From Octopus bimaculoides (Eukaryota), in assembly GCF_001194135.2 (NCBI RefSeq), contig NC_068983.1:138170261-138231427 (forward strand): a stretch of 61,167 nt of DNA. Direction: 5' to 3'. A program made the translations under genes and the position numbers. Numbering within the stretch: the first letter of the stretch is position 1; each line of letters starts with the position of its first letter. Under the pieces are notes generated by a model, which was not told the origin of the DNA, did not search any database, and worked only from the letters and a program-made list of their open reading frames with translations. Shown here one piece after another: positions 5,098-52,880 of this stretch.

Positions 5098-5295
5098 ATA
5101 TATATAATGAAGAGTTTTGGTCTAGGTAACCCAAACCAATAGGTATCCAATTTGAGTGCTCCAATCGACAAGCCACTAGGATCCCAGTTCAAACAGGCGT
5201 TGGAGTTGTGGTGGCACAACTGTCCAGTCGGCAGAGAACCGGCAATCGGTAGCTTACCTTTGAATCAACAGGTATATGTTAAAGAAGAGTCAAAC

Positions 5296-5957
5296 AATTA
5301 ATGAAGGTAGGACTATGTCATTTAAATTTATTTAGTTTAGTTTAATTTAAAAGAGTTAATGCTAATGCAATGCAGGTATAATTAACAGATATAGTCTCTA
5401 ACAGCTTTTTCTGGGATATTCCAGGTACTGGATTATCCTATTGATCCAAGGTTGCAGATATATACGGAGGAAATTATTGGCAGAAAATTTTTTTGTAGGA
5501 AAATGTAGAAAAATGTGTTCACACCGACTTTCAAATTGCTAGCACTTTTGTTTCCCTTTCCTCCAATAGATATATTACTCGGCCTTTATTTTGAACAATG
5601 AACTTATCTATGAATGTACGCAAGGAAGAACCCTTTCATATGGGTCGGAATGAACTACTATACCCTCGATAATCTATAACCTATAACGAACCATGAACGT
5701 TCTACCGTGCTACGCATTTTCCTACAACAAATGTTCCTGCCTATAATTTCCTGCTTATATTTCTTATATGTCTCCGATGATGGAATGTCCAGTATATGGA
5801 ACCTTGGATCAATAAAATAATCGAGTAGTTGGGATATCCCAGAAACAGCTGTTACAGACTGTATCTATTAATTCTACTTGCATTGCATTAGCATAAAATC
5901 TTTTAAATTAAACTAAACGAAATAAATTTAAATGCTTTAGTCCTGCCTTGAATAATT
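5296..5957. mobile_element. Foldback/MITE-like non-autonomous element with long terminal inverted repeats
   Basis: 5296-~5506 is the reverse complement of ~5714-5957 (about 85% identity by eye, with one ~35-nt indel). The interior is non-coding. Confidence 0.7.
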
Positions 5958-5959
5958 AT

Positions 5960-6590
5960 TTTCCTCTTCTTACTTGCACGACTCTATTCTTTGTTTCTTT
6001 GTTTGTTTGTTTCTTTCATGCTCGATTCCCTCCTCTTTTCCCTTCACTGTGTCCCTGTCATTTTTTCTCGTCCATCCTTAATTCTTCTGTCCCTCTCTCT
6101 CTTCTCTCCCCATGTGACCGGTGTTCGGCCAAGCCTGGCCCTTCTTTCTTGGTTGGGCCTCTGTCCGTGCAACATATATATTCCTCCCCGTGCCTGTAAA
6201 ATTTTGTATCCCTGCCGTAAAGCTTTATTTCCACACACGCCAGCTTAATTTAATTCGTCCATAGTCGAAAGACACCTGTTGTTATGTCCTGTATTTGTGT
6301 AACATTCTCCGTTTTTTTTCGTCCTTGTTTTCGTATGCATTCGCTGCTTTCTTCCAAGGAATCTAATGCTCTTAGCATAGTTTTTCTTTGGGTCTGGTCA
6401 GATTAAAGCATTCTCAAGTATAACCAGCCGAAATTGCAAAGATAATCTGGAACTCGACTGAGGAAAGAAAACTCCGAATGACCCGTCCTTGTTTTCTTTG
6501 TATCGTCTATCTGGATGTTTTGTTGTCCCCTTTTTGTGTCACCTGTCTGGATGTTTTGCGTTCTTGTCCTATTTTGTAACAACAGACGAG
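5960..6590. repeat. Unclassified interspersed repeat
   Basis: 6224-6356 has an inverted homologue at 48029-48180 (TTCCACACACGCCAGCTTAATTTAATTCG...CGTCCTTGTTTTCGTAT..ATTCGCTGCTTTCTTCCA). Internal direct repeat TCTGGATGTTTTG occurs twice near 6510-6560. Confidence 0.7.
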
Positions 6591-7279: not shown

Positions 7280-7483
7280 TTTAGCACAAGTCTAGCCATT
7301 TTGTGGTAGAAGGCAAGTCGATGAAATCGACCCCAGTGCTCGACTGATACTGATTTTATCGACACTGAAATGAGGAAAGGCAAATTCGACCTCGGAGAAT
7401 TTGAATGCAGAGCAGGAAGACGGACGAAATGCTACAAAGCATTTCGCCCGGCGTGCTAACGATTGTGCCATCTCGCTACCTTA
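7280..7483 (-). mobile_element. tRNA-derived SINE, family A
   Basis: Reverse complement is homologous to 52657-52880 and 36023-36250, with a recognisable A-box-like head and B-box-like ATTCAAATTC. Confidence 0.85.
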
Positions 7484-21730: not shown

Positions 21731-24303
21731 TTAGTGTAAAATCACGCATTTTAAAATCGAACAGTGACACATAAGTATGAGCGACAATATGGCCTTTTCG
21801 TTAGTAGCGAGACTAGCAACATCGATGACAGAAGTGACCTTTCCACGCACACCTGGACTAATATAGTAACAGGAGAGCTAAATTTACGAAGTAAAGAAAA
21901 CTGCATCTTACACATGTTGATGTTTTACTTCGTCAATTATGATTTACTGGAATATTATAAATGGTGAATATGATCAAATGATCATATATGTAATATTTTA
22001 TACCATGTATATTCTGTCTGTTCAACTTATTGATTTTCATGCTTATCTTAGATCTATATCTTCCTTTTTTTTTCCATCATAAACTATTTATTTTCATTAT
22101 ATCATCTTTGACTACTTTATGTATTTGGTCAAGGATATGCTTAGTGCGATGTATTTCCGATCTACAGATTTCAGGCATTTTATATAACTTTAGAAATATG
22201 GTTTCATTCGATAGCAAGCATTCAGCGTTGCCCATTTGTATTAACTGAATACGCATCTATATGTCTTAACAAATTATGACCATAACGTAGGTTTTAGCAT
22301 ATTTATTTATTTTATTATTACAGCATTCTCTTATATTTACACTCCATGAAATTCTATCCAACTTACTCAGTAAAAACTTGTTTATTGATTTTTCTTCGTT
22401 TTTCTTCAGTAATGGTACAAGGGCGTGAATCCGTTTCCACGAGAGCGAATGTGTTTGCTAAAATGTACCGACAAGTTGCAATGATATTATTACTAAAATT
22501 AAAAAAAAAAAAATTTTAATTACTTTCCTTCATATTACTTGTATATCATTTCTTCGATTTAAAAGCAACAAAACTATACATTTAACAAAAAAAAAAAGAC
22601 AACATTTCTTTATATCAAATGTAGATACACTTAACTCTCTGTATGCATTCGTACCATATTACTGTGTAATTCTATATATAAGTTAATGTTTGTCTATGGC
22701 ACGCTATATTTCCTTAGTGGGATATAAATAACTTTTAGTTGTTTTGATTCTCAGCTTGTATAAAATCTGCATATTTTTTATATGGAATAGAAAAAAAAAA
22801 TATTTGAAAGAGAAATTAAATTATTTTCCATTATCATGATATTTATAACCCCTACAATGCAATGCTTAAACTGAAAAATAGAACTTAATATTATACGTGC
22901 ATATGCATTTGACACAATTGCCCATCTGTTATATAATTTTTTGTTTGTATGTATGAGTACACATCGTTGTGTATGAATGGCTTGCGTGTGTATAATGATA
23001 TACCCTCTCTCAGTGTTTTAACTACATGTGTGATCCCAAAGTTTTTTGTTTAGATATTTAAATTTGAAGATTCCTGTCGAATTAAAACGTTATTAAGTTT
23101 GAAAATATTTCGTTTTAAAAGTATTTGACAAAGGACTTATTACAGCTCAGTTTTAACAATGTGCTAAAAATAAATTATGTCATAAAAAAAAAAAAATTCA
23201 ACAACATGGCTAATCTAGAGATTTAATTTGCAGTAGTTGATATTTTGATGGTTCCATTGCTTCTGTTGTGTGATATTTTCACCTTCCAAGTATTTATCTG
23301 TATACGACTTTGTTAAAAAAATTTCACTTCACAAACATGTGGTTCCTGATCCTAGCATAATGCGCATCATATTAAGCAAATGTTTTGTTCTGTCATGATC
23401 ATGGCTTGGCCGATGCCATGCAAGTGAAATTTGGCCGTCGAAAATTGTAAGAAAACTTGTCACGTGCATGCGCAATGTCTCCTCCTGTCTCTCTCTTTCT
23501 CACACACACACACAGACATATACACACACAAGCACACAGACACGTGCGCGCGCATCTCTATCTCGTTCTCTAATACACACATACACACACGTGCTTCGCT
23601 GTGTCTCTCTTTGATTGTTTGCATACTGGAGTACATTCTTGCAAACATATTGTCATATTTAAGTCCACAAGGAATATAGACTAGTAAACTCAGGTAAAAC
23701 AAAAAAGTTCGATAAAATTCTACCTCGATATAAGTACCCCATAAAGGCTGTAGTGCAGCGGCTAAAGCTGGCAAAAAAGTGAAGTGGTATATATATATAT
23801 ATATATATNNNNNNNNNNNNNNNNNNNNNNNNNNNNNNNNNNNNNNNNNNNNNNNNNNNNNNNNNNNNNNNNNNNNNNNNNNNNNNNNNNNNNNNNNNNN
23901 NNNNNNNNNNNNNNNNNNNNNNNNNNNNNNNNNNNNNNNNNNNNNNNNNNNNNNNNNNNNNNNNNNNNNNNNNNNNNNNNNNNNNNNNNNNNNNNNNNNN
24001 NNNNNNNNNNNNNNNNNNNNNNNNNNNNNNNNNNNNNNNNNNNNNNNNNNNNNNNNNNNNNNNNNNNNNNNNNNNNNNNNNNNNNNNNNNNNNNNNNNNN
24101 NNNNNNNNNNNNNNNNNNNNNNNNNNNNNNNNNNNNNNNNNNNNNNNNNNNNNNNNNNNNNNNNNNNNNNNNNNNNNNNNNNNNNNNNNNNNNNNNNNNN
24201 NNNNNNNNNNNNNNNNNNNNNNNNNNNNNNNNNNNNNNNNNNNNNNNNNNNNNNNNNNNNNNNNNNNNNNNNNNNNNNNNNNNNNNNNNNNNNNNNNNNN
24301 NNN

Positions 24304-24612
24304 CAATAAATGTCCACATAGCACAAGGAGCGAAGACGAAAACAAATAAACCAGTAAAAATAACAAGATAATTCCAGATCCTGGATTTCTGGCTTTGCAT
24401 AAATAATGCTTTGCCTTCATCGGTGGAATATACTCAAGCACATAAATACAAATATATGTATATAAACAGTATACTTATATATACGGACGTATACACACAT
24501 ATATATGCACGTATGTACACGACTAGCTTAAATAGCCCGCCTAATCCAGGATCTGGAATTATCTTGTTATTTGTTTTCGTCTTCGCTCCTTGTGCTATGT
24601 GGACATTTATTG
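24304..24612. repeat. Inverted repeat pair, 24304-24387 and 24543-24612
   Basis: The arms are identical apart from a 14-nt segment missing from the right arm. Spacer is 155 nt, and the left arm abuts a gap. Confidence 0.9.
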
Positions 24613-35136: not shown

Positions 35137-35370
35137 ACGTGGAGGCGCCTGGCTTAGTGGCTAGACTGCACTCATGATCGTAAGATTGTAGTTTCGATTC
35201 CTTGACTGGGCGATGCATTGTCTTCATTTCATGTTGCTGAAGTCCATTCAGCTGGCAAAAATGAATAATCCTGCAACGGACTGTTGTCTCAACTAGGAGG
35301 CGAATATATACAACACATAATCCAAGAAACCGGCCATATACGCCTGTTGTTCGAGAATGACCTTTGATGC
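35137..35370 (+). mobile_element. tRNA-derived SINE, family C
   Basis: GAGGCGCCTGGCTTAGTGGCTAG (A-box), GTTTCGATTCC (B-box), then TTTCATGTTGCTGAAGTCCATTCAGCTGGCAAAAATGA. A diverged inverted homologue lies at ~38400-38560. Confidence 0.8.
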
Positions 35371-35461: not shown

Positions 35462-35596
35462 NNNNNNNNNNNNNNNNNNNNNNNNNNNNNNNNNNNNNNN
35501 NNNNNNNNNNNNNNNNNNNNNNNNNNNNNNNNNNNNNNNNNNNNNNNNNNNNNNNNNNNNNNNNNNNNNNNACACACACACACACACACACACACG
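35399..35596. repeat. (CA)n microsatellite spanning a gap
   Basis: Direct observation. Confidence 0.95.
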
Positions 35597-36022
35597 TATA
35601 TACACACAGAAGCGTAGACACATGTACATGCATACAATCTTGAGAGATTAGCTTTTTCAAAATCAGAAAGGAGAAAGCAAATTCGAAGACTACAGATAAA
35701 AATGTGTAAAACTTTCCAGAAGTTTATCATTTAATTATATATGAGCATGTCTAGATATGCAATTATATGCACGAGAATACATACATAAAATAAAACATAC
35801 AAATCTGGACAGATAGATAGATAGATAGATACATACAAACATACATACATACATATATACAAAAATACCTTGTTGATATTTTCTGTTCACTGAAAATGGC
35901 AGCCGAAACAGTTGTCATGCTTCAAACGGCTTACAAGGGCGCTGCCGTGAGCAAAAAACACAAGTTTACAAGTTTATGATATTTAAATAATGGTCACCTG
36001 CCGCTTGAAGACCAACCTTGTT

Positions 36023-36250
36023 TTTTTATTGCCCACAAGACGCTAAACATAGAGGGGACAGACAAGGACAGACAAACGGATTAAGTCGATTATATCGACC
36101 CCAGTGCGTAGCTGGTACTTAATTTATCGACCTCAAAAGGATGAAAGGCGAAGTCGACCTCGGCGGAATTTGAACTCAGAACGTAACGGCAGACGAAATA
36201 CCGTTAAGCATTTCGCCCGGCGCGCTAACGACTCTGCCAGATCTCCACCT
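36023..36250 (-). mobile_element. SINE family A, full length with target-site duplication
   Basis: Minus-strand head GGTGGAGATCTGGCAGAGTCGTTAGCGCGCCGGGCGAAATGC, B-box GAGTTCAAATTCC and an A-rich tail. Flanked by the direct repeat GAAGACCAACCTTGTT at 36007-36022 and 36252-36267. Confidence 0.92.
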
Positions 36251-36612
36251 GGAAGACCAACCTTGTTCAGGGCCATTGGTGATCTCCCGAACGAATGATA
36301 ACAACGCGAGAGTTCATGAACTGATCTTGGAGGACCTTCGCCGAATAATTGAGGAACTTGTTGATATGATTGGTGTATACTGAAAATCCTGTTAACAAAG
36401 CGTTGTTTTCATTCGTTCGGGAGATCACCAATGGCCCTGAACAAGGTTGGTCTTCAAGGTGGAGATCTGGCAGAGTCGTTAGCGCGCCGGGCGAAATGCT
36501 TAACGGTATTTCGTCTGCCGTTACGTTCTGAGTTCAAATTCCGCCGAGGTCGACTTCGCCTTTCATCCTTTTGAGGTCGATAAATTAAGTACCAGCTACG
36601 CACTGGGGTCGA
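36095..36612. repeat. 213-bp near-perfect inverted duplication (arms 36095-36307 and 36400-36612)
   Basis: Base-by-base comparison shows 2 mismatches (at 36251 and 36299). Spacer is 92 nt. Confidence 0.97.
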
Positions 36613-36856
36613 GGAATTGCGAATGAAAAGTGTTGTGCCTCGTTTGCTAACGGAAGATCAAAAGCAGTTGCAACTGAATGTGTGTTGTGAACTGAAAGAA
36701 CAACTGGAACAACTGAAACAACCCTCCTTGTTCACCCAATTTCCCTCCTTGCGACTTTTTTCCCCCTAAATGAAAAAGGTCCTTAAAGGAAAACGTTTTG
36801 CAGATGTGGAAGAGGTGAAGAAAAAACGACGGAAGTGTTAAGAGGCGGAAAATGTA

Positions 36857-36875
36857 TACATACATGCATACATAC

Positions 36876-36906
<31 letters not shown>

Positions 36907-36909
36907 CAT

Positions 36910-36946
<37 letters not shown>
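36857..36946. repeat. (TACA)n/(GACA)n microsatellite
   Basis: Direct observation. Confidence 0.95.
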
Positions 36947-37849
36947 GTGGAATTTCTATTTGACTCCATGTGAATTGCTATGAATATATCGTTGTAATAT
37001 TAGACGAAAAAGCTTCCTTTATTGTTTATATTCGGATATATTTCATATTAGCTGATACTCATTCATTCTTATAAATGTATCAGCCATTTGTGCATCATCA
37101 ACTTATTCGAAGTATAATATATTTAAAATCTCCGGCAATATATGTACAGTCTTTGATCTGTGATCGCTATAATCTGTTTGTATACAATTAAATAAGTGCT
37201 ACCTTTGCACCAGAGAGAATGTGTGAATGGGGACGAGTGTGAATATGTGTGAATGGGGACGAGTGAGTTTGACGTGTGTGCGTGTGTCTGTTGTGTGTAG
37301 CAGTTGATGTGTGCTTTTTCAAGTGGTATGTGCACATGTGTATGTGTATGTGTGTGCGTGTCTTTGACCAAATCATGTGCATGTAAATGTTGGTGGGCGA
37401 AAGTAATCTTTGTGTATGCATGTTGCGTGTGTTTATGCGTGTTGCGTGTGTGTGTGTGTGTGTATATTGTCAGTGTTCAGGTATTACGTACTTGTGTGGA
37501 TGTAGGAGGATGTATTGTTTGTGTTCAGATATTATGTGCTTGTGTGTGTGTGTTAGTGTGCATGAGGGTATGTAGTGTCTGCACTGAATTAAACAGTGTC
37601 TGTCTGCTCGTATAGTAGTATGTGTGGTGATGCTATTGAAGACTGTGTCTGAGTATGTGGATAATGGTGTGTGATGTGGGTGCTGATAAGTGGTCGGTGC
37701 TAAAGTGTGTGGAGAGGGAAGGTGTTGTGGGAGTGTGTGTTATGGTGTGTGAAGTGAGTGATGAGTTGAACAGTGTGTATGGTTGTTTGTATAGTGCGTT
37801 TGTGGTGAGGGTACCCAGGTAGGTGGCATGCACATGTGCAGGTGAGGGG

Positions 37850-38045
37850 GCAGTTAAATGTGGGAGGTGTGTAAGAATCCGTGTGGGGTTGGAGTCAGAT
37901 GAAGAGAGGAGATTAGTTCCTGTTCATGGTGAAGGCGGGAGTCCGGGTGGCCCTTGTGCGGAGACAATCTGAGCACAGACAAATGTTTTATCGAATGACC
38001 GGTAGAGCAGATGTAGTGCAAGACCGGAGTGTCATAGCGGACCCC
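37850..38045 (-). mobile_element. Penelope-like GIY-YIG endonuclease C-terminal fragment
   Basis: TPVLHYICSTGHSIKHLSVLRLSPHKGHPDSRLHHEQELISSL. Homologous to 56770-56930 (PVLYHFCST...QHLFVFGLVLHKGRSDYSLGLEQ). Confidence 0.75.
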
Positions 38046-38399
38046 CCCCCCCAAAAAAAGATAATCACAAACGCAAAATCCATCACAAAATTGGGTATCG
38101 CTATTTCTAGTATTGCATTCTGTCTACCAGAGGCACCTGTGTAATATTAAAATATTTTAAAGATGGATCTTACAGCATTTTGATTTGAAATCTTGTAGTA
38201 ACATCGAAATTGGTTTTGAGATTAGTGATAACTTTTTCACAGATATATAAACTGAAAATATAGTATGTAATTGTAGTAGTCAGTCGCAAGTGATTATAAC
38301 TTGATAGCATTTACTATGCTTTCGCTAATTGTTTTACATCCCCATGTAGCTGAGAGAAAACATGCACTCCCCTCAGGTATATCACCATTGACCAAGCAG

Positions 38400-38560
38400 A
38401 ACAACCGTGTAAAGACAGAAACGGGCTGCACTATCGCTAAGCTAATTCTTACTTTCAGTTAAGTGGACTGGAATAACATCAAATAACGTACACAAGAACA
38501 CAGCATGATACTCGGTCCAGTAATCGAAACTGTAAAATTATGACCGATAGCCCATACTAA
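38400..38560 (-). mobile_element. SINE family C, diverged
   Basis: TTTCAGTTAAGTGGACTGGAATAACATCAAATAA...CACAAGAACACAGC is the reverse complement of the family C body at 35137-35370. Confidence 0.6.
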
Positions 38561-38899
38561 TACAAATAATTATTCTCTAAAATAAAGATATTATATCTAA
38601 ATTACGTTAATGCAATCAACCCTTGTCCACTTATATTCATTAATAACACTATGACCAATTATGTAGTAAATTATAACATCAGTTCAATATTTAAACTATT
38701 GCAAATGTATGAAGTAGGCTTGAAATATACGCAAATCAGATAGACACATCATCATTAATGCTTGCAAGATTATGGGAGGTAAAATAGCAAATTAAATATA
38801 CATTAACATTTCCTCTCCTCTCAGTAGATTAAATATCATGGCTCGTTCAATTGAAAAAAGGTTTTAAGCATTTCTTTGACGGAAAAATTAAAGCAAAGA

Positions 38900-39065
38900 A
38901 TCTTGTCCGACTCCCTTGCAATTTCGCTGAGGCTTTATAGAATCTGAAAGGATGTAAAATAAAGTTGATCTTGGCGGGATTCAAACTCACAAATTTAAGA
39001 ACCAGAATATATACGATATGATATTTCTTACAACGTTATAACGCTTTTACCAATTCGACGCCATT
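38900..39065 (-). mobile_element. SINE family A, old and diverged
   Basis: GAAAGGATGTAAAATAAAGTTGATCTTGGCGGGATTCAAACTCAC...ACCAATTCGACGCC resembles the inverted family A head. Confidence 0.6.
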
Positions 39066-40149
39066 TTCAATACACACTAGCATAATTGGAAGATGCTACA
39101 AGCTGTTAAATATCCTAAATAATTACATTACTATAAAACTCTTACGTTTCAACACTATTACCTTTAGGTGGATCAAGTTATGTAATTCTTTTAATCATGA
39201 AACTGTAGCTCATGATGAAAATGTCACTTGAGCTAACGCTTCACAGTGTCCGTGACGATTCATTATTAGCAAGCTACAACCAAATAGACAACAGTATAAG
39301 TTAACTTGCTGGAACACTAATTGCTAACAGATATAAACGAGTATTGTAAAAGCAGAAATAGAAGGACTAAACAAAAGATAAGTGGTGCTGCATTGTGAAC
39401 ACAATAACATTATCTTTAGTTCGCAATATTACATATATGACAACTTACAGTATATAATTCTGTAGATAGCACTCATAGATACCACCTCTATATCCATTTT
39501 CATATACACCCTTTTTCTCTCTTTAATATGCACACATTTACTCATACATAGACGAGAAAATAAGAACGGATAAAGACTTCCTCTTTGGAGAAAATGTTAA
39601 TAAATTGCAAATTTATTTGCTCTGAATATCTTCACAAACTTGCAGCTTTAGTTATCAAACTATGACCTTAACTCTCTGGTGGTTTCGTAACAGCTTACAT
39701 AAGAAGTTCGACATAGGGCTTCGCATTAGTCTCTACTTCATCCTATGACTGACCAACATATACCACTTTTGCTTTTATATTTAATCTGCTTCACTTTGAT
39801 GCAGATAATCACACATTTCCAATTCTAGTGTTTCTCCTTATACATAATACACATTAATTAGTTTTTCTTTTCCTCCCATTCTAGATGCAACAAATCACAT
39901 GTTTTCTCTCTCCCGTTATCTTCTCTGTGAGATTTTGAGTTGATCGATTCAAGAGTCATTGGTTGCTACCGTGTTATAGGTTCACTTTTTGTTCTAATAT
40001 ATTTAATTCTAATGGGCCACTTAACTGTAAAGAGGTATACCACAACAATATATTTCACAGCTGCGTAATATATGTGTGTATTCTTGTTACCATGTAGTGA
40101 AGATTGCAATTCATTCTATATGTATAGCTTGAAGAGAGATGGGTTTACT

Positions 40150-40600
40150 CTAGTAAGAATGCTGAATTATTTCTGCTTGTATGACCAAAGCTTATAGAAC
40201 CGAATACTATGCTGTTACTAATTTCATTATTTGTTCTCATTCCCTTGATATTCGATACAAGCAGAGATGGTATTAAGAAGATCAAGCATTTGTGGTATAA
40301 ACACTTCAAGCTAAAATAAATACTACAAGCAGTAGTGCAGCTTAATGATGTCTGCAGAGAATCTGCAGAACTGATGGATCTCTTGTTAGCGTGCAGTACT
40401 AAACCCCAAATCACCAAAAGATACAGAACAACAAAATCAATTACAGAACATGATGGAGAAATCTCTTAGTAGTCACTCTACATGCTAGACATAGCGGCCA
40501 AATCTCACTTAAGTCACATCTAACTGATTCGAAACAGGAACCTGGATGCATTTTAAGAAGTTACGAGATGATGACCTGAATGATTTTGAAAATGTACAAT
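40150..40600 (+). mobile_element. Possible RTE-like LINE linker/RT-start relic
   Basis: Weak: LWYKHFKL (cf. RW.EHF..LLN) and RHSGQISL (cf. K.GG..L). Heavily decayed. Confidence 0.3.
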
Positions 40601-41819
40601 CTGGGCTACAAAATCCAACAACAATCACCTCCCTCACATAACTCAGAAGCGTCTACAATCCCTAAAATTTGTATTTTACAAACTAAAACACCTACTTAGT
40701 TAAATAGAAACAGTAATAATACTATGATTAAATGAACAATAAATTTATAAATAGAAGCAAACTGTTGCTGTGTTCGAAATGTTTTCACCTAGCGCACCTT
40801 CACTGTCGCGCTGGCCAATTGCTAAAGACATACATATCAGTGTAAATTCGAAAAAAATTGCAGCGTGATGCACTGCTCAATAAATCGTTGCATATGAAGT
40901 GCATAATGTGAACATCAATTTGTTGCATTGGGGATGGATGGCATTTTTCGGTTGACCAACTAGCTATTGGCATAGCCTTGCTCAGTCAGCGTTGATATTG
41001 AGCTAAACAACAATTGTTAAAATATCAGCAGAAACAAAAATATATGACGACCCTATTTATGCGCTGACTTTTAAGAGTCAAATTCATTATGTGAATAGTG
41101 CTACTGCTCTATTTTAGTGGTATGTTTACGGAAGCCGTATCTGTTATGCAGATTCCTTTACCTGTTGAAATATTTTTTATCTTGCTTTAGTCCCTATACA
41201 TTATGGTCGATGTGGTTTACAAGTGAGGGAGTCGATATTTGGCCTGTTAAAATTAACATGAATATCTCAAATTATATCTCATCGACTTAGAAAAACACAT
41301 TAGAAAATGGTGCACTTTCTCTTGCGGTAAAAAAAGACTTGAAGCTACACCATAACAAAAATCCCGCCACAGAAAGACACCAAGCCAACAAATTTGATAA
41401 AATAGTCTATTAAGAGTTTGAGAACTGTTTATTATCATTATATACATAATTTGTAAATTAATTAATTGCCTAAATAGTTTACAGAAAACGGTAACTGCAT
41501 TGCTTATCCTTGTGGAATTTAAAGATTAGTTAAATTAAAAAGAGAATGCAATGTAGCTGTAGTTTTCGAAACTATATTATCGGTAAATATGAAATTCAGC
41601 GCTCGTCCCTCTGCGGCAGTTTGACCTTCCATCCAAACAATATACTTATAGACACAGGTGAACTATTTAGATAAGAATGAATTTAATAGATTCTAAGTGA
41701 TAAATATAAGATGAAGTGGGAAAAGAAGCAGAGATATGAAAGCAAACAGACAAGACCAATAATGATGGAAGAACAGGGGAAAAATATACAGATGAATGAG
41801 CTGAAGATTAATGTAGTAG

Positions 41820-42170
41820 TGTTAGTGATAATGATGATGATAATAATGGAGATGATGGTGATGATGGTGATGATAAGATGATAGTGATGATAGAAACAAG
41901 GACAAAAAGAAAGATATGTTAATTATGATTCCAAAGTGAGGAAAAAATGACATTATAATGATTATGATTATGATAATCAGAAGGATGATAAGGATGGTAA
42001 CAGTAAGGAAGATTATGAGGAGGTGGATTAATGCCGAACTAGTGATAAAAAAAGGAGAAAATATGAGGAAACAAATTATGAAAATATAAAATAAAAATAC
42101 TATTTTGTAGAGAGAATACAAATACAACCTTGAGGTTGGGTGCCTTCTCTTATTTGTTAAGAGGTTTTAG

Positions 42171-42235
<65 letters not shown>

Positions 42236-42580
42236 AAGTAGTTGTAATAGTAAATTATTGGGGCAATATAAAGAGTAGCAACATCACAAACATCAAGAAA
42301 AATAAATATATGCATATGATGAATATGAATATGATGGTGATGATGATGAATATGATGATGATGATGATGAGAAAGAAAAGAATGGAGATTTAAAAGAACG
42401 AAAAGAGGAAGAAGAAGAAGAAGAAGAAGAAGAAGAAGAAGAAGAAGAAGAAGAAGAAGAAGAAGAAGAAGAAGAAGAAGAAGAAGAAGAAGAAGAAGAA
42501 GGAGAACAACAGAAGCAGCTGCAGCAACAACAACAAACACAACAAAAGCACCGTCGACAACAATCAAGAAAATGGAAAGA
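41820..42580. repeat. Trinucleotide low-complexity cluster: (GAT)n, (CTA)n 42170-42236, (GAA)n 42409-42500, (CAA/CAG)n
   Basis: Direct observation; explains the poly-L, poly-H and poly-M ORFs. Confidence 0.95.
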
Positions 42581-43049
42581 AAATTAAAAAAAAAAATAAT
42601 GCAGAACTTCTGCTTGGGTAAGCCATTAATATGGGCCACTCAACAACGATCGTCCATTTTACTTTAGTCTGTTAAAGGCGGCCATTTATCAGACATATGT
42701 GTAGTCACGTGTTAAACAGATAATGAGCTGTGGATCGAATTGCTAGTGCAGCTATTGTTTTGTTTCTTCAGTTTTTTTTTGTATTATTTTTGTAGTTGTT
42801 GCCCTTCTCTGCAAATTTGTCTTTAATGCTGGTTGTTATTGAAGTCGACGGTGTTCTTTTTGTCGGTTGTTGTCATTGTTGTTCATCTTCCCATCATGGT
42901 TCTTATGTTATTACTTGTGCAACTTCTTGACTTACCACAGTAGTAGTAGTAATATTAGCAGAAGTACCAACACCAACAATAGTAGTAGTAATAGTTGTAG
43001 TTTTTTGATTACCTGTATTCACTATTGAACAGAGTGCAGTTCTACATCT

Positions 43050-43350
43050 GCGGTACTTGCAATGTTTTTTTTTAAGTGCTATTGTTTTGCGAACAGCCTG
43101 TAGTGTATGCGTTGGGCCTAGTAATACAATTAAAGTAGGTATGAAAGTTCTTGTGTTTTGGTTATATTTTCGCAGGTTACTTATTTTTATGGGGATTAAG
43201 TATACTTTCGACTCCTCACACCTTGTTTCCATCTATTGCGGTACCCTTATTTTTTTAAAAATAGTTTCTACATTTTGCTTTATAGATGTAATGTCGTTCG
43301 TTCGAGTTGAAACTTGCTTTCGTAGACATTTCCTTTCCTAATGGTCAAGA
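43050..43350 (-). mobile_element. Penelope-like RT fragment
   Basis: Minus-strand AAGGGTACCGCAATAGATGGAAACAAGGTGT reads KGTA(M)GTRC with a small indel, matching the PLE motif KGTAMGT..AP.YANL. Confidence 0.45.
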
Positions 43351-44149
43351 GAATGATTTCCCTTGTCTCGCTATTTGCATCATATGTCCCAGAATGACAA
43401 AAATATGGTGATTTTGATGCCGTTTATTTACTCTGAGACATATAAAATATAACCATATTTTCTAGTGTATAAAAGCGCCCAATCTGCCACTGACATGATC
43501 CTTATATATACTTCGCGCTGACTAAATCGAGCAGCAAGAAACAATGTGACTGATTACTTCTTCGTAGCATTTACATATCCAACTTATACTATTTGCTTTC
43601 CTTTCTACTGCATAGCTTTTTCAGTTTCTGGTGGGAAGGGTTTCGTTAAGTGCCATGATTTAAAAATAGTTCCATCTAATTCTGCTCAGCCGCTGCTGAG
43701 TTCTCTTCATTTAGTTCTTCTTCATCTTCTCGAGTATTGTCCATGTAAAATATTTTCCATGTTAAATATGGTAATTTATAATTCCATTATCCATTTATTT
43801 GCTTTCAATACTTTTTCTATACTTCGCATATGTGTTTGTTAACTTCGTCGCTGTTACCTTATAACTTTTGGCTTTCACTTTTGTTGATGTAGTATAACTA
43901 TTTGTATAACTTTCCCTTTATTCATTACAGTATACATTTTATAAAAATTTTGTAATTTCTTAAAACCTGTATCTCACATATAATTTTTAGTATCGAATTT
44001 TGGGCGATACATCTAAAAGCATTATTATTTTCTTGGCTTTACTATTTAACCTTGGTTACTCATTTAATTTCTTTTTCATTCCAACTATCAATTTTATTAG
44101 ATCAGTTATTGTATTAATATATATTCGTATTTTGTGTTTGGATAACATT

Positions 44150-44420
44150 TGACTGTTAAATTAATGAGTATATAATATTCCTTCATAACCCTCATTTCAT
44201 TAAAGTATGTGTTTGAGTATTCCAAAGACATTTGTACACTTAATGCAATACTGAGGCTGAATAATAGGCATGCACTGTGTGACATACCCCCCCACTCCAG
44301 TTAGTATTATTGATACAAACATTCGATAAACTTCTACACAGCTGCTAAATAACAAGTTTCTCTCACAAGTTTGGGTTGATCCGCTGCCACGATAGGAAAC
44401 ACTTGTCACAAACGCGGCAT
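44150..44420 (-). mobile_element. Possible Penelope GIY-YIG fragment
   Basis: TQTCERNLLF.SC...QPQYCIK resembles F.C.S.NLIY.I.C..C...YIG...H...I..PQY. Decayed. Confidence 0.35.
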
Positions 44421-45571
44421 AGTGAGATGGAATCCAAGATACTACGAAAGCCTAAGGAACCTCTTTATCTTTCAGTTAAGCTTAGTATATGTAATTATCA
44501 AGAACATTATTAATTTTTCTTCCTTGGTAGTTTCATGCGTGTCTTTATTGCATCACTTGGTGTACTTCGTGCTCCTGAGGTGTGTGTAGCATTGTGTTCA
44601 TATTTTTCTGAGAATTGGGGGGAGTGTAGACTTTTATCATCCTCCTTCTCCTCTTCCTATTCCTCCTCCTTCTGCCTCCTTCTCATAATTTTTGAATTTC
44701 ATTGCAACAAGGCATGTTTCACGTCCTTCCCTTTAGATTTAATATTTGTCATTTTCTATTATGTAGTTTAGTCTTGTATATTTTTTCTAGTTTTGTTAAC
44801 ATACACAACGCGAGAGTTAAAAAAAATTGTTGACAATATTTTACCCTAAGAAGGGGACATATTGTCCTCGCTATTCTGCTTCTATTTTGCTAGTCTGTTT
44901 CTGATTTGACGTTGTGTATATTGTGGAGATGTGGGTGATGATTTTGAATACAATGGCGGCCATCTTGTTTCTTCAGAGGAAGGGAATGTTTTAATGTCTT
45001 TAACGTTACAGACAAATTTGAAAATTTGGAAAATAACACAAACATATTTATCACGGACTTTAGAAATACAAACAAAATCGAAAATAACACATTGGACAAG
45101 AGTGCCAGCAGCGTGTCTTGTAACAACAAAGACGGTAGTTTTTCTTTCCACTAGAATATAATGATAACAGGTGACTATTGTAGGATGTAAAATCTGTTAA
45201 TAGAAACGCGTTGGCGAATGTGGTGGTTTCATGCATACGGTTAGACAACATTTAATGGAAGACAACATTCTAGAAAGTCAAGTGTGCCAGTTGGTACATA
45301 GACAAAAGACATTAAATAAATGAAAAATAAATGAAAAAATAAATGAAAAGACATTAAATAAATGAAAATGAAGGAAAAATTTATAGAGTACATAATTTTA
45401 TATGTATAGTTATAAAACTATATTAAGGGAAACTAGCGAGTATTTCAACAGGCCAAGCCATACGCTAAAAGAAGACGTCAAATGATGCTAAACTACCTTA
45501 AGTATCACATTAACACGTGCTGAAAGCGAGAGAAAAAACGAAGATTCATGAAGAGGTTCAGTTATGTATCA

Positions 45572-45572
<1 letters not shown>

Positions 45573-45635
<63 letters not shown>

Positions 45636-45680
45636 ACGCACACACACACACACATACACACGTACATATATATATATATC
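45573..45680. repeat. (CA)n/(TA)n microsatellite
   Basis: Direct observation. Confidence 0.95.
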
Positions 45681-45789
45681 CCATGTGAAAACGAACATTG
45701 GTGGGTTCTAAGAAATAATAAAATAGATAAGATCAGGCACCAACTATGTGGGAAGTAGTTTCTCATGTAGATTAACAAATATACTATTC

Positions 45790-46180
45790 CATTGAACGTG
45801 ATGTCAAAAAACCTCCACTGTTACAAATGTCCAAAAATATACACCTCTTTCCCTTTATGGGAGAATACTATTTATTAAGGTAAAGGCAAGAACATAGTCA
45901 AGACTAATAGAAATTAACGTTTCGGCTTTGGTTTTCTTCATAAAAGACTTATAGGGAGAATCGAAAAGCTTGTTGCTGTAATTATGGATGAATTTGAAGA
46001 CTAACCCGAAGTGAGCCTGGGTATTAGGCTAATAGAAGCTGATAACCGAGAAATACAAAACCGTCCCCGATAAAATTTTCATAAAGAACCTAAAAGTAAG
46101 TATTTAGCAGAGTACAGAAAATTCAGTTGTTTCAAGTGCTGTAATGCCCCTTCTCCTTCCTTAAACAACAGCAATATCAA
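45790..46180 (+). mobile_element. Possible L1/Tx1-type LINE ORF1 relic
   Basis: With one frameshift it reads TVPDKIFIKNLKVSILAEYRKFSCFKC, resembling the IP..I....V..EGR...C.KC start of a gag-like zinc knuckle. Upstream is KLVAVIMDEFED. Confidence 0.3.
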
Positions 46181-46899
46181 GAAAAAAATTGTAATATAAC
46201 CATGGAAACTGTTGTTGTTACCTAAGCGATCTGTGTCTTAAAAAACAGTAATGTCTTGAGCTACAGGGATAACATTCGAAAGAGAAACCTTTCTAACCAC
46301 GCTTTTAACCAAGTTGAAAATGGAAATAATCTTAGTCGAACTTCTCCCTCAAAAATATCTCTAGTAGAAATCCTACTCTCAAATTGCAACATCATATTTC
46401 TAAAGTAAAGAAGATGGAGTCTGAACCAAAATGGCGGATCACAAATAACCATAGAAGCAGAAAAAGAGGGGGAAAAAAAAAAAAAGGCTGCAGAGAATGC
46501 AGATTAAAAAAGGAGGAAAATTTCAGCATGAAGACGGCAACGAATAGTAAACAGCGTTTCATCTTCACATTCAGACTTTCATAATGATTTGGAAGAGAAA
46601 TGCGATGACGTGGTATAAAGGAAAAGATATATTGTGTCAGAGCGGGAAGGAGGATAATAAAAAATGAATACGCAGATAAGTTTCCCATCAAAACTGAGTG
46701 AAACATTTACATTAAAACAAAAGTAAAATTATCTTTTATAAAAATAAGAGTTTTTTGTGAAATCACGAGATTTTACAGAAATCGCGATATGTACGAAATC
46801 GAGAAACGGTGTATTGAGTGAGATAGAGCGTGTCTAGCGTCAGTGTCACCTGCTGAATGAACTCAGGTAATGAGGTCTGGAATATATATATATATATAT

Positions 46900-47043
46900 G
46901 ATAACAAACAGATGTATTAGTTTAACGCTCGGGAAGTGAAAAAGCCTTTAACGTTTGGAGCCTACGCTCTTCCACAGAAAGGAACACAGAATGAAACAAG
47001 GAGAGAATATAAAGAATGTGTAGTGGCTAGCGATCTATCATCG
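46900..47043 (-). repeat. Second copy of the 6600-6720 repeat
   Basis: Same-orientation homology to 6600-6720. Confidence 0.75.
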
Positions 47044-48028
47044 CGGCATGCACACACTCATTCCTGTGCGTGTGTGTTTGTGTTTTTATATCTGTATATG
47101 TGCACGAGTGCTTGGGTGTTGTAATTCTGGTAAAAATCTATTTCCATAATTTATGAAATAAATTAAGCGTATACAGTGTGTTTTATAGATTGGGCACAGA
47201 CACATACACACACACGCACACAAAGTGTGTATATGTGTAAACGGGTAGATAGAGAGAAGGAGAAGGCAGAGAGGAGAAGGGCTAAGGAGAAAAAGATAAT
47301 TATCTGTTACCTGCGACATCTACGAGCATTAATTATCTTTTAAATAGATATTTTAATTAAGCTTTCCTCGCTTATATTTTAGCAATTCAGATTCAATTTC
47401 TGATCGTCAAGAAATTAGTATTTATGTGTAAGATTTAAACTGATAGCGAATTCCTTTGTGTCTGCATCTTAGTAGTCAGTATTCAGTAGCAAGCTACTAT
47501 AACCTATGCTCAGAGCTAACAAGCTGTAATAAATATATTGAACTTAATGATGAGGCTGGTCGAAATAATTTTAAGGCTCAAATCTGATATTTTGTATATT
47601 AAAACAGCTTTCCATTGCTTTCACTTCTTAGCCCAATAACCTGTGTAAATGTATAGAGTAAATAGAACTTAATGCAAATAGTAAATGCGAATGCTGCTTC
47701 GGTACATCTCGGTACAACATAGCAAAAATTCAGCGACATGTTTATGGGCTCACAGTAATGCTGACGATAAGATACGAATCAACGACATCAAGTCCAATGT
47801 CTAATGCTTTAAAACAAGATTAATTTTCACCCACACACATTCGACTACGAAATTCATCGACGAAGAAATGGCTAAAAAAATTATATGTGTGTGTGTATGG
47901 TATATATATACTTTTTTCTAGTGACGAAAGTTACTGATCTCGAAAAAGTGAAAACAAGCAATAATAAATAAATAAGCGAGGTATAAACAGCAGCTGCTCG
48001 ATATCGTGAAGAATATTTGCCACCTAAA

Positions 48029-48180
48029 TGGAAGAAAGCAGCGAATTTATACGAAAACAAGGACGGAAAAACAACGGAGAAATGGTACACAAATACAAAC
48101 GCAAGCAACAGGACATTAAACAACAGGTAACTTTCGATTAAGGCCGAATTAAATTAAGCTGGCGTGTGTGGAAGTGAAAT
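48029..48180. repeat. Partial inverted copy of the repeat at 6224-6356
   Basis: Direct reverse-complement homology. Confidence 0.8.
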
Positions 48181-48191
48181 CTTACTGCAGT

Positions 48192-48265
<74 letters not shown>

Positions 48266-52656: not shown

Positions 52657-52880
52657 TAAGGCGGCGAACTGGCAGAAACGTTAGCACGCCGAGCGAATTG
52701 CTTAGCGGTATTTCGTCTGCCGCTACGTTCTGAGTTCAGATTCTGCCGAGGTCGACTTTGCCTTTCATCATTTCGGAGTCAATAAATTAAGTACCAGTTG
52801 CATACTGTAGTCTATCTAATCGACTTGCCCCCTCCTCAAAAATTTCGGGCCTTGTGCCTAACGTAAAAAAGTTTATTATG
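52657..52880 (+). mobile_element. SINE family A, full length
   Basis: AAGGCGGCGAACTGGCAGAAACGTTAGCACGCCG (A-box region), GAGTTCAGATTC (B-box) and 3' GGCCTTGTGCC. Confidence 0.92.

What the first reader, a model, noticed from the sequence alone, without database searches (positions are those of the whole stretch)
36095..36612. Young 213-bp inverted duplication copying a SINE-mariner junction: a near-perfect hairpin
Seen: the arms 36095-36307 and 36400-36612 are reverse complements with only 2 mismatches and a 92-nt loop. The duplicated unit is chimeric: about 155 nt of SINE, the target-site duplication, and about 40 nt of mariner. It is therefore not a TIR and not two independent SINE insertions. 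The mariner frame resumes right after the inverted arm (…TCGA|GGAATTGCGAATG = ELRM) with only a few codons apparently lost. Inference: a replication template-switch (fold-back) event after the SINE inserted. Established: long perfect inverted repeats form dsRNA if transcribed, and coleoid cephalopods have extensive ADAR A-to-I editing. This could be a newly born editing or small-RNA substrate.
Basis: partly seen in the sequence, partly recalled or inferred. Interest (0 to 1): 0.7.

Follow-up and report, generated by a model that had tools for sequence, protein, structure and literature searches.

The report
Inverted local copy makes junk-DNA hairpin
A 213-base stretch spanning the junction of two dead transposons in an octopus-like genome was copied backwards 92 bases downstream, giving a near-perfect hairpin; this is a known kind of one-step mutation, and nothing here shows that it has a function.

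Summary
Arms 36095-36307 and 36400-36612 are reverse complements with 2 mismatches in 213 nt and a 92-nt spacer.

Each arm is a chimera of about 155 nt of SINE 5' head, the 14-18 nt target-site duplication and 40 nt of a dead Mos1-type mariner. The spacer and both outer flanks are colinear mariner. The right arm is therefore an inverted, locally templated insertion made after the SINE landed.

At both mismatches the right arm keeps the ancestral base. This fits real sequence that has diverged, though two haplotypes could give the same pattern.

The event matches the "3-2-1-4" template-switch class and foldback synthesis at a break. Two junction readings remain open:
- A 213-nt copy replaced about 10 nt, with no priming microhomology.
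- 209 nt were primed from a 4-nt inverted microhomology (GCGT/ACGC), with an exact return to the next base.

Arm divergence suggests an age of roughly 1.3 My (0.16-4.7) if no gene conversion occurred.

No gene, transcript, editing or small-RNA evidence could be obtained. The dsRNA-substrate idea remains an untested possibility in a genome already rich in such hairpins. An assembly artefact is unlikely but not excluded. I rate it an ordinary new member of a known kind, of low interest.

The parts
35862..36022 (+). 5' part of a dead, end-truncated and internally deleted Mos1-type mariner fragment. It ends in TSD copy 1 (TTGAAGACCAACCTTG[TT], 36005-36020/22).
   Evidence: The translation AETVVMLQTAYK...LEDQPC aligns to P0001, an HTH_48 / Mos1-like protein. 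The DNA aligns to an O. sinensis copy at 71%.
36021..36249 (-). Full-length SINE of about 229 nt. Its 5' head GGTGGAGATCTGGCAG... starts at 36249 and reads leftwards; the A-tail lies at 36021-36027. An A-box match (TGGCAGAGTCG, 1 mismatch) sits at SINE positions 11-21, and a TTTT run at SINE positions 112-115.
   Evidence: Full-length matches at 83-89% to three copies in O. sinensis locus L001. ARAGORN and Rfam call no tRNA here.
36250..36267 (+). TSD copy 2 (TgGAAGACCAACCTTGTT). G36251 is a derived base.
   Evidence: Compared directly with 36005-36022 and with the right-arm copy 36440-36457, which has T.
36095..36307 (+). Left arm, the source segment: SINE head 36095-36249, TSD 36250-36267 and mariner 36268-36307.
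   Evidence: It is contiguous with the rest of the SINE and with the spacer, in the mariner frame.
36308..36399 (+). 92-nt spacer. It is mariner sequence colinear with both flanks (RVHELILEDLRRIIEELVDMIGVY*KSC*Q) and is not inverted.
36400..36612 (+). Right arm, the inverted copy: reverse-complemented mariner 36400-36439, reverse-complemented TSD 36440-36457, and SINE head in sense on the + strand 36458-36612. The first 4 nt (GCGT, 36400-36403) may be original mariner sequence, that is, the priming microhomology.
36613..36850 (+). 3' part of the mariner fragment (ELRMKSVVPRLLTEDQK ... KKVLKGKRFADVEEVKKK). It carries an internal deletion and lacks the terminal inverted repeat.
   Evidence: Compared with the complete element in L002.

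Best explanation
This is a real, lineage-specific, one-step structural mutation in non-coding transposon debris.

Order of events:
1. A Mos1-type mariner copy decayed.
2. A tRNA-promoter-type SINE inserted into it on the minus strand, making a 14-18 nt TSD.
3. Later, a DNA 3' end at about 36399/36403 switched template. This end was either a nascent strand at a fork or the resected end of a double-strand break.
4. It copied the same strand backwards from 36307 (or 36303) to 36095.
5. It then rejoined the original sequence at G36613.

In the four-point template-switch model this is type 3-2-1-4, with point 3 = 36095, point 2 = 36307, point 1 = 36399 and point 4 = 36613. The outcome is an inverted repeat with an uninverted spacer.

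Two point substitutions then accumulated, both in the left (source) arm.

What is shown and what is inferred:
- Shown: the anatomy, the colinearity, the ancestral states and the order SINE-then-copy.
- Inferred: the enzymology (fork switch versus break repair), the exact switch points and the age.

No function is indicated. The hairpin would become double-stranded RNA only if a Pol II transcript reads through the locus.
For: - The arms and their statistics are confirmed.
- The arm contains the SINE 5' end, defined by full-length O. sinensis copies, then the TSD and 40 nt of mariner.
- The mariner identity is established through relatives. The window translation hits P0001 at E = 1.7e-27, 46% identity over 99% of the query. 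P0001 carries HTH_48 and matches Mos1 transposase 3hos at E = 3e-20.
- The spacer and both flanks are colinear with the homologous copies.
- At both mismatches the right arm holds the ancestral base. T at 36456 (reverse complement) matches the other TSD copy. A at 36408 (reverse complement) matches GAAAAC in both homologues.
- The SINE copy differs from a three-copy consensus at 14 of 155 arm positions, and all 14 differences are shared by both arms. The copy is therefore much younger than the SINE's own divergence.
- There is a possible 4-nt inverted microhomology. GCGT precedes GGAATTG in the O. sinensis copy, and ACGC lies at 36304-36307.
- The mutation class is documented. Type 3-2-1-4 / 1-4-3-2 made up 31% of high-confidence human-chimp template-switch events (PMC5453318). 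Template switches create whole hairpins in one step (PMC10710096). Foldback inverted insertions of 2 to about 150 bp, with a 41-nt loop, form at yeast breaks (PMC11724301).
Against: - No orthologous empty site or second assembly could be reached, so the pre-event sequence is inferred from paralogues only 71% identical in DNA.
- Under the simplest junction reading there is no inverted microhomology at 36399|36400.
- At 213 nt the copy is longer than the events in the cited studies: examples of 28 nt or tens of nt in primates, and mostly under 14 bp in yeast.
- The window is a gap-ridden scaffold with 13 N runs.
- Both derived bases sit on one arm, which two haplotypes would also produce.
Confidence: 0.7

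Rival explanations
1. Capture by end joining. A displaced local DNA fragment of about 213 nt (Okazaki-fragment size, bottom strand 36307 to 36095) was ligated in inverted orientation into a double-strand break 92 bp away, with a few bases lost. No foldback priming was involved.
For: - There is no inverted microhomology at 36399|36400 under junction reading A.
- Microhomology at the outer junction is 0-3 nt (CGA). That matches the 0-5 bp reported for NHEJ capture.
- Capture of genomic fragments at breaks is a documented route (PMC11724301).
Against: - Under reading B, a 4-nt priming microhomology sits exactly at the inner arm end and the return is to the very next base. Random capture would not produce this.
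- A source only 92 bp away favours an intramolecular foldback.
Confidence: 0.12
2. Assembly artefact. The right arm was placed during short-read contig extension or gap closing, perhaps from reads of the other haplotype, and does not exist in the animal.
For: - The window has 13 N runs, the nearest at 35462-35571.
- A 156-nt stretch is identical between the arms and cannot be resolved by k-mers alone.
- One arm carries both derived bases and the other both ancestral ones, as two haplotypes would.
- No independent assembly was found.
Against: - The copy is an internal insertion bounded by two novel junctions (AACAAA|GCGTTG and GGTCGA|GGAATTG). Reads must contain these junctions.
- Colinear mariner sequence resumes within at most 10 nt.
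- It lies in a 12.7-kb gap-free stretch (35572-48265).
- It is the only such repeat in the window, so there is no systematic palindrome artefact.
- Missed-adapter or amplification palindromes have no unique spacer with colinear flanks (my own knowledge).
Confidence: 0.1
3. The event is real but not young. An older inverted duplication has had its arms kept 99% alike by intrachromosomal gene conversion.
For: Nothing in the window tests this. That inverted repeats of this size and spacing can undergo arm-to-arm conversion is my own knowledge. The age estimate rests on only 2 differences.
Against: Conversion would spread derived bases to both arms as often as it erased them. Here both sites still show one ancestral and one derived state, and the outer and inner boundaries are sharp.
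Confidence: 0.1
4. The inverted copy arose during SINE integration itself. Reverse transcriptase or second-strand synthesis jumped template, in a process related to twin priming.
For: The right arm's + strand equals the strand that second-strand synthesis would make, running from mariner through the TSD into the SINE head (inference).
Against: - The copy starts 40 nt beyond the TSD boundary, not at the second-strand nick.
- It is truncated at the 3' side of the SINE and has no A-tail.
- It sits at a separate break 92 nt away.
- The 14 SINE differences from the consensus are all shared by both arms. This suggests time passed between insertion and copying, though the consensus is cross-species and weak.
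Confidence: 0.03
5. The arms are terminal inverted repeats of a foldback or MITE-type transposon, or two independent SINE insertions in opposite orientation.
For: The only support is that the region is an inverted repeat built from repeat-derived sequence.
Against: - Each arm carries the unique SINE-TSD-mariner junction.
- There is no direct repeat at the outer flanks (GATTATA ... GGAATTG).
- No other copy of the junction or of the mariner part occurs in the window or in L001.
- The mariner flanks are colinear across the structure.
Confidence: 0.01

Closest known systems
Short-range template-switch mutations, four-point model type 3-2-1-4 / 1-4-3-2 (Loytynoja and Goldman 2017, PMC5453318; Monttinen et al. 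2023, PMC10710096)
   Same: A single event writes the reverse complement of nearby sequence between colinear flanks. It creates a perfect inverted repeat with an uninverted spacer. Later point mutations then introduce mismatches.
   Different: The copied fragment is 209-213 nt, whereas the primate examples are tens of nt (for instance 28). The stem is far too long for a miRNA precursor. The ancestral state is inferred here from paralogues, not from an orthologous outgroup.
Foldback inverted templated insertions at double-strand breaks (Pol delta synthesis plus NHEJ capture, yeast; PMC11724301)
   Same: A local inverted copy is separated from its template by a loop of tens of nt (41 nt in yeast, 92 nt here). 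Microhomology at the capture junction is 0-5 bp. There is little or no loss at the break.
   Different: The yeast events were 2 to about 150 bp and mostly under 14 bp, and were primed from a 10-bp imperfect inverted microhomology. Here at most 4 nt is available for priming. This is a germline event in an animal, and the enzymes involved are unknown.
Inverted SINE pairs as ADAR substrates (inverted Alu pairs; hyper-edited repeats in Octopus bimaculoides, PMC5625713)
   Same: Two inverted copies of SINE sequence lie close enough to pair within one transcript, giving a long near-perfect duplex. Octopus has the strongest hyper-editing signal and an unusually high share of loci able to form such duplexes (4.4e-3).
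   Different: The pair arose by local copying, not by two insertions, so it is 99% rather than about 85% matched (compare the inverted SINE pairs in L001). Neither transcription nor editing is shown here.
Hairpin-RNA (hpRNA) endo-siRNA loci of Drosophila, and inverted-duplication origin of plant miRNA genes (my own knowledge)
   Same: An inverted duplication of existing sequence yields a long, perfect hairpin.
   Different: Those loci are defined by transcription and Dicer products. Nothing of that kind could be tested here.

Membership tests
Template-switch mutation, four-point type 3-2-1-4 | An inserted fragment that is the reverse complement of nearby sequence on the same chromosome | tested here: met
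   36400-36612 is the reverse complement of 36095-36307, matching at 211 of 213 positions.
Template-switch mutation, four-point type 3-2-1-4 | Flanking fragments F1 and F3 colinear with the ancestral sequence, spacer not inverted, switch points in the order 3<2<1<4 | tested here: met
   The spacer and both flanks align in order and orientation to mariner copies L001 and L002 and to proteins P0001 and P0002. The switch points are 36095 < 36307 < 36399 < 36613.
Template-switch mutation, four-point type 3-2-1-4 | Ancestral (outgroup or orthologous) sequence lacks the inverted copy | not testable with these tools
   No orthologous locus could be fetched. Exact-protein look-ups and two metagenome scans found nothing.
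Foldback inverted insertion at a double-strand break | Short inverted microhomology next to the break that primes the synthesis | tested here: inconclusive
   There is none at 36399|36308 if 10 nt were replaced. There is a 4-nt GCGT/ACGC match if 36400-36403 are original mariner bases, as in the O. sinensis copy.
Foldback inverted insertion at a double-strand break | Capture junction with 0-5 bp microhomology and little loss | tested here: met
   The outer junction GGTCGA|GGAATTG has 0-3 nt of microhomology (CGA if the ancestor read GAGCGA, as in L002). The loss is 0-10 nt.
Inverted-SINE ADAR substrate / hpRNA locus | Long intramolecular duplex if transcribed | tested here: met
   The RNA fold is -458 kcal/mol, z = -39, with a 213-bp stem and two mismatches.
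Inverted-SINE ADAR substrate / hpRNA locus | Both arms on one transcript; clustered A-to-G changes or 21-22 nt duplex small RNAs | not testable with these tools
   No expression data are available. No Pfam-supported gene was found among 10 selected long ORFs of the window. Any Pol III transcripts from the two SINE heads would diverge, be same-sense and meet TTTT at SINE positions 112-115.
MITE / foldback transposon | Terminal inverted repeats bounded by a target-site duplication; multiple copies | tested here: not met
   There is no direct repeat at the outer flanks. The arms are chimeric. No further copy was found in the window or in L001.
Inversion by staggered breaks with flanking inverted duplications | The segment between the duplicated arms is inverted relative to the flanks | tested here: not met
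   The spacer 36308-36399 continues the mariner reading frame from the left arm and is colinear with 36613 onward.
Mos1-type mariner (host element of the event) | Homology to mariner transposase (HTH_48 and the DDE catalytic domain) | tested here: met
   Pfam finds nothing directly on the decayed translation. However, that translation matches P0001 at E = 1.7e-27. P0001 has HTH_48 at 2e-10 and matches Mos1 3hos at 3e-20 and SETMAR. No terminal inverted repeats are present in the window copy (compare L002).

The most novel reading that the evidence does not exclude
The locus is read through by Pol II in neural or germline tissue. The 213-bp duplex, about 155 bp of it SINE head, would then be a newborn hairpin-RNA gene. 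It would either be a hyper-edited ADAR substrate or a source of siRNAs able to act in trans on transcripts of an abundant octopus SINE family. That would be a dated, one-mutation birth of a transposon-silencing or editing locus.
Probability: 0.06. Interest if true: 0.5.

Novelty: new member of a known kind. Interest (0 to 1): 0.22.

Why it matters
If real, this is a clean natural example of one local template switch building a very long (about 210 bp) perfect hairpin from pre-existing junk. The chimeric SINE-TSD-mariner arm fixes the order of events and rules out the usual 'two repeat insertions' origin.

Such events are one source of the many near-perfect double-stranded RNA structures that underlie hyper-editing in octopus. 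A genome-wide census of chimeric-arm hairpins would measure how much of that pool comes from template switching rather than from transposition.

As a single locus with no sign of expression, it does not change what is known.

Tried and rejected
- **Pfam and PDB on the window's own mariner translation.** Nothing significant was found. The identity had to be shown through P0001.
- **Rfam and ARAGORN on the SINE head.** No tRNA or SINE family was called, only microsatellite-driven sub-threshold miRNA matches.
- **Independent assemblies.** Four exact-protein look-ups of ORFs in or beside the hairpin found nothing on record. These negatives carry little weight. Look-ups need an identical called ORF, and octopus DNA is not expected in those metagenomes.
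- **Whole-window inverted-repeat scan with the repeat finder.** It was swamped by N runs, so I redid it with BLAST.
- **Gene context.** 10 ORFs of 90 aa or more gave no Pfam family above its cut-off.
- **Models rejected:**
  - Staggered-break inversion: the spacer is not inverted.
  - MITE or terminal inverted repeats: there is no TSD, the arms are chimeric and the structure is single-copy.
  - Two independent SINE insertions: the arms include mariner sequence and the TSD.
  - Twin-priming-like event at integration: the boundaries are wrong and there is no A-tail.
- **Direct repeat at the junction.** A 5-nt direct repeat AACAA lies at the inner arm end (36300-36304) and at the spacer end (36393-36397). 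I could not fit it into any switch model and treat it as chance.

Full report
**1. The observation**

The inverted repeat exists exactly as described.
- The repeat finder reports arms 36095-36307 and 36400-36612: 213 nt, 99% complementary, 92 nt apart.
- A base-by-base comparison finds two mismatches. One is 36251 (G) against 36456 (T when reverse-complemented). The other is 36299 (T) against 36408 (A when reverse-complemented). The match does not extend at either end.
- A self-BLAST of the whole window scores the pair at 383 bits. It is the only near-perfect long inverted repeat in 61 kb.
- Folded as RNA, 36075-36632 gives one continuous stem at -458 kcal/mol. Shuffled sequences give -163.6 +/- 7.5, so z = -39. 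Chance is excluded.

**2. What the arms are made of**

*The SINE.*
- Three full-length copies at 83-89% identity lie in a 20-kb Octopus sinensis locus, L001, fetched through a protein hit. They define the element's ends.
- In the window the SINE lies on the minus strand. Its head (GGTGGAGATCTGGCAG...) is at 36249 and its A-tail at 36021-36027.
- It is flanked by TTGAAGACCAACCTTG(TT) at 36005-36020/22 and again at 36250-36265/67. This is a 14-18 nt target-site duplication. The exact length depends on whether the first two bases belong to the SINE and the last two to the tail.
- An A-box match with one mismatch lies at SINE positions 11-21. ARAGORN and Rfam call no tRNA.

*The mariner.*
- The surrounding sequence translates, with stop codons, to a mariner-like protein.
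- Pfam does not recognise this decayed translation.
- However, it matches protein P0001 at E = 1.7e-27, 46% identity over 99% of the query, and an O. sinensis protein P0002.
- P0001 carries the Mos1 HTH_48 domain. It matches Mos1 transposase 3hos at E = 3e-20, and SETMAR.
- The window copy lacks both transposon ends and has an internal deletion, as comparison with the complete element in L002 shows.

*The arm itself.* Each arm is therefore 155 nt of SINE head, plus the TSD, plus 40 nt of mariner.

**3. Which arm is the copy**

- The left arm runs on into the remaining 74 nt of the SINE, its tail and the other TSD copy, so it is the original.
- The spacer (36308-36399) continues the mariner frame from the left arm (...SRTNDNNA|RVHELILEDLRR...).
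- The sequence after the right arm (36613 onward, ELRMKSVVPRLLTEDQK) continues it again.
- Both stretches align in order and orientation to the O. sinensis and L002 copies.

The right arm is thus an inverted insertion into otherwise colinear sequence.

This rules out three alternatives:
- Terminal inverted repeats. There is also no direct repeat at the outer flanks and no second copy anywhere in the window or L001.
- Two independent SINE insertions.
- The staggered-break inversion model, which would invert the spacer.

**4. The two mismatches**

- At 36251 the right arm has T. This matches the other TSD copy, or equally the AAGG start of two of the three O. sinensis SINE copies (the third starts TAGG). 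The left arm has G.
- At 36299 the right arm has A, giving GAAAAC as in both mariner homologues. The left arm has T.

Both substitutions are therefore derived in the source arm after the copy was made, and both are transversions. This is what real, independently evolving copies look like. However, two haplotypes could give the same pattern, so it does not by itself exclude misassembly.

**5. The junctions**

Homologues read ...TGCCAACGAA CTTTGA GCG(T/A) GGAATTGCGAATG. The window reads ...TGTTAACAAA, then the arm, then GGAATTGCGAATG.

*Reading A.* The 213-nt copy replaced 10 nt (CTTTGAGCGW).
- There is then no inverted microhomology at the inner junction.
- There is up to 3 nt (CGA) at the outer junction, if the ancestor had A as in L002.

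*Reading B.* The first four bases of the 'arm', GCGT at 36400-36403, are original mariner sequence. The O. sinensis copy reads AGCGT|GGAATTGCGAATG.
- A 3' end ...GCGT would then pair with ACGC at 36304-36307, which is exactly the inner end of the left arm.
- 209 nt were synthesised.
- The strand returned to the very next base, with no loss.
- The missing CTTTGA would be a separate 6-nt indel. With it, the protein alignment reads SC*Q--SVELRM against SFCQRTLSVELRM.

I lean toward reading B. A 3-4 nt coincidence at that exact spot is less likely than one more small indel in a copy that already shows a 12-nt indel nearby. Only the orthologous empty site can decide.

**6. Mechanism and precedent**

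With switch points 36095 < 36307 < 36399 < 36613, the event is the 3-2-1-4 type of the four-point template-switch model.
- This type creates an inverted repeat with an uninverted spacer. Together with its mirror case it made up 31% of high-confidence human-chimp events (PMC5453318).
- The same process has been shown to create complete hairpins in one step (PMC10710096).
- A break-repair version is documented in yeast. A resected end folds back, Pol delta extends it, and NHEJ captures the product with 0-5 bp of microhomology. Those events have a 41-nt loop and inserts of 2 to about 150 bp (PMC11724301).

The present case is longer (209-213 nt) than those in the cited studies.

The sequence alone cannot separate three routes: a fork switch, a break-primed foldback, or end-joining capture of a displaced local fragment of roughly Okazaki size. 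I give the templated-switch family 0.7 and pure capture 0.12.

**7. Age**

- The arms differ by JC 0.0094.
- A repeat study of O. vulgaris calibrates JC 0.09 to about 25 My (PMC13282606). On that scale the arm divergence gives about 1.3 My, with a Poisson range of 0.16-4.7.
- This is well after the 13-33 My split of O. vulgaris and O. bimaculoides quoted in the same paper.
- The SINE copy differs from a rough three-copy consensus at 14 of 155 arm positions, and all 14 are shared by the two arms. The copy is therefore much younger than the SINE's own divergence.
- Gene conversion between the arms could make the event look younger than it is.

**8. Artefact?**

*For concern:*
- The window has 13 N runs.
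- 156 nt of the arms are identical.

*Against:*
- The insertion has two novel junctions that must be present in reads.
- Colinear sequence resumes within at most 10 nt.
- The structure lies in a 12.7-kb gap-free stretch.
- No other such palindrome occurs in the window.

I could not obtain an independent assembly. I put an artefact at about 0.1.

**9. Function**

- Nothing in the window looks like a gene. 10 selected ORFs of 90 aa or more had no Pfam family above its cut-off.
- The two SINE heads face outward. Any Pol III transcripts would therefore be divergent and same-sense. Both would also meet TTTT at SINE positions 112-115, a run absent from the O. sinensis copies. The hairpin RNA would need Pol II read-through.
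- Octopus does show the strongest hyper-editing signal among the animals surveyed. It also has an unusually high fraction (4.4e-3) of loci able to form long near-perfect duplexes (PMC5625713).
- If transcribed, this locus would therefore probably be edited. It would be one of very many such loci.

The editing or small-RNA idea is reasonable but untested.

**10. Verdict**

- The structural interpretation is supported.
- The mechanism is narrowed to a known class.
- Function is unknown and probably absent.

This is a new member of a known kind and of low interest. Its main value is as a tidy example whose chimeric arms fix the order of events.

Noticed in passing
window 24304-24384 and 24549-24612: A second fold-back. 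It has a perfect 46-nt inverted repeat (24304-24349 / 24567-24612), plus a further matching block (gataattccagatcctgg / ccaggatctggaattatc). It starts at the very edge of the N run 23809-24303, so its left arm may be cut off by the gap, or it may be a gap-edge assembly effect.
   Followed up: partly
window 5282-5460 and 5793-5971: A 179-nt inverted repeat at 85% identity with a 333-nt spacer. It may be an older fold-back, a MITE-like element or an inverted repeat pair.
   Followed up: no
window 35813-35861 and 36856-36944: The mariner fragment lacks both transposon ends (compare the complete element in L002). It is bracketed on both sides by the same ATAC/ACAT-type microsatellite, as if a transposon fragment sits inside, or was captured into, a microsatellite tract.
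   Followed up: partly
window 36135-36138 and 36569-36572 (SINE positions 112-115): This SINE copy reads CCTTTTGAGG where the O. sinensis copies read CCTTTCGGGG. The change creates a TTTT run, a likely Pol III stop, inside both arms. The copy is probably transcriptionally crippled.
   Followed up: partly
window 35140-35350: A different SINE-like element has a tRNA-type head (TGGCTTAGTGG ... GTTTCGATTCC). It lies next to an (AC)n tract and the N run 35462-35571. ARAGORN does not call it.
   Followed up: no
window 52659-52826 and 7315-7470: Two further, more diverged copies (84.5% and 79%) of the same SINE family as the one in the hairpin.
   Followed up: partly
L002 1461-2386 (ENA ERZ27257291 k141_536920): A contig from a metagenome assembly carries a complete, internally deleted mariner. 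It has terminal inverted repeats (TACGTGGGGGGACCCAAAAGAAACCGGAA...) and an open 223-aa frame. This looks like animal host DNA in a metagenome, and it is the best intact relative of the window's fragment.
   Followed up: partly
L001 6205-6437, 15279-15500, 15925-16156: In O. sinensis the same SINE family forms ordinary inverted pairs at 84-89% identity, separated by about 9 kb. This is the usual two-insertion way of making double-stranded RNA, and it contrasts with the 99% local copy in the window.
   Followed up: partly
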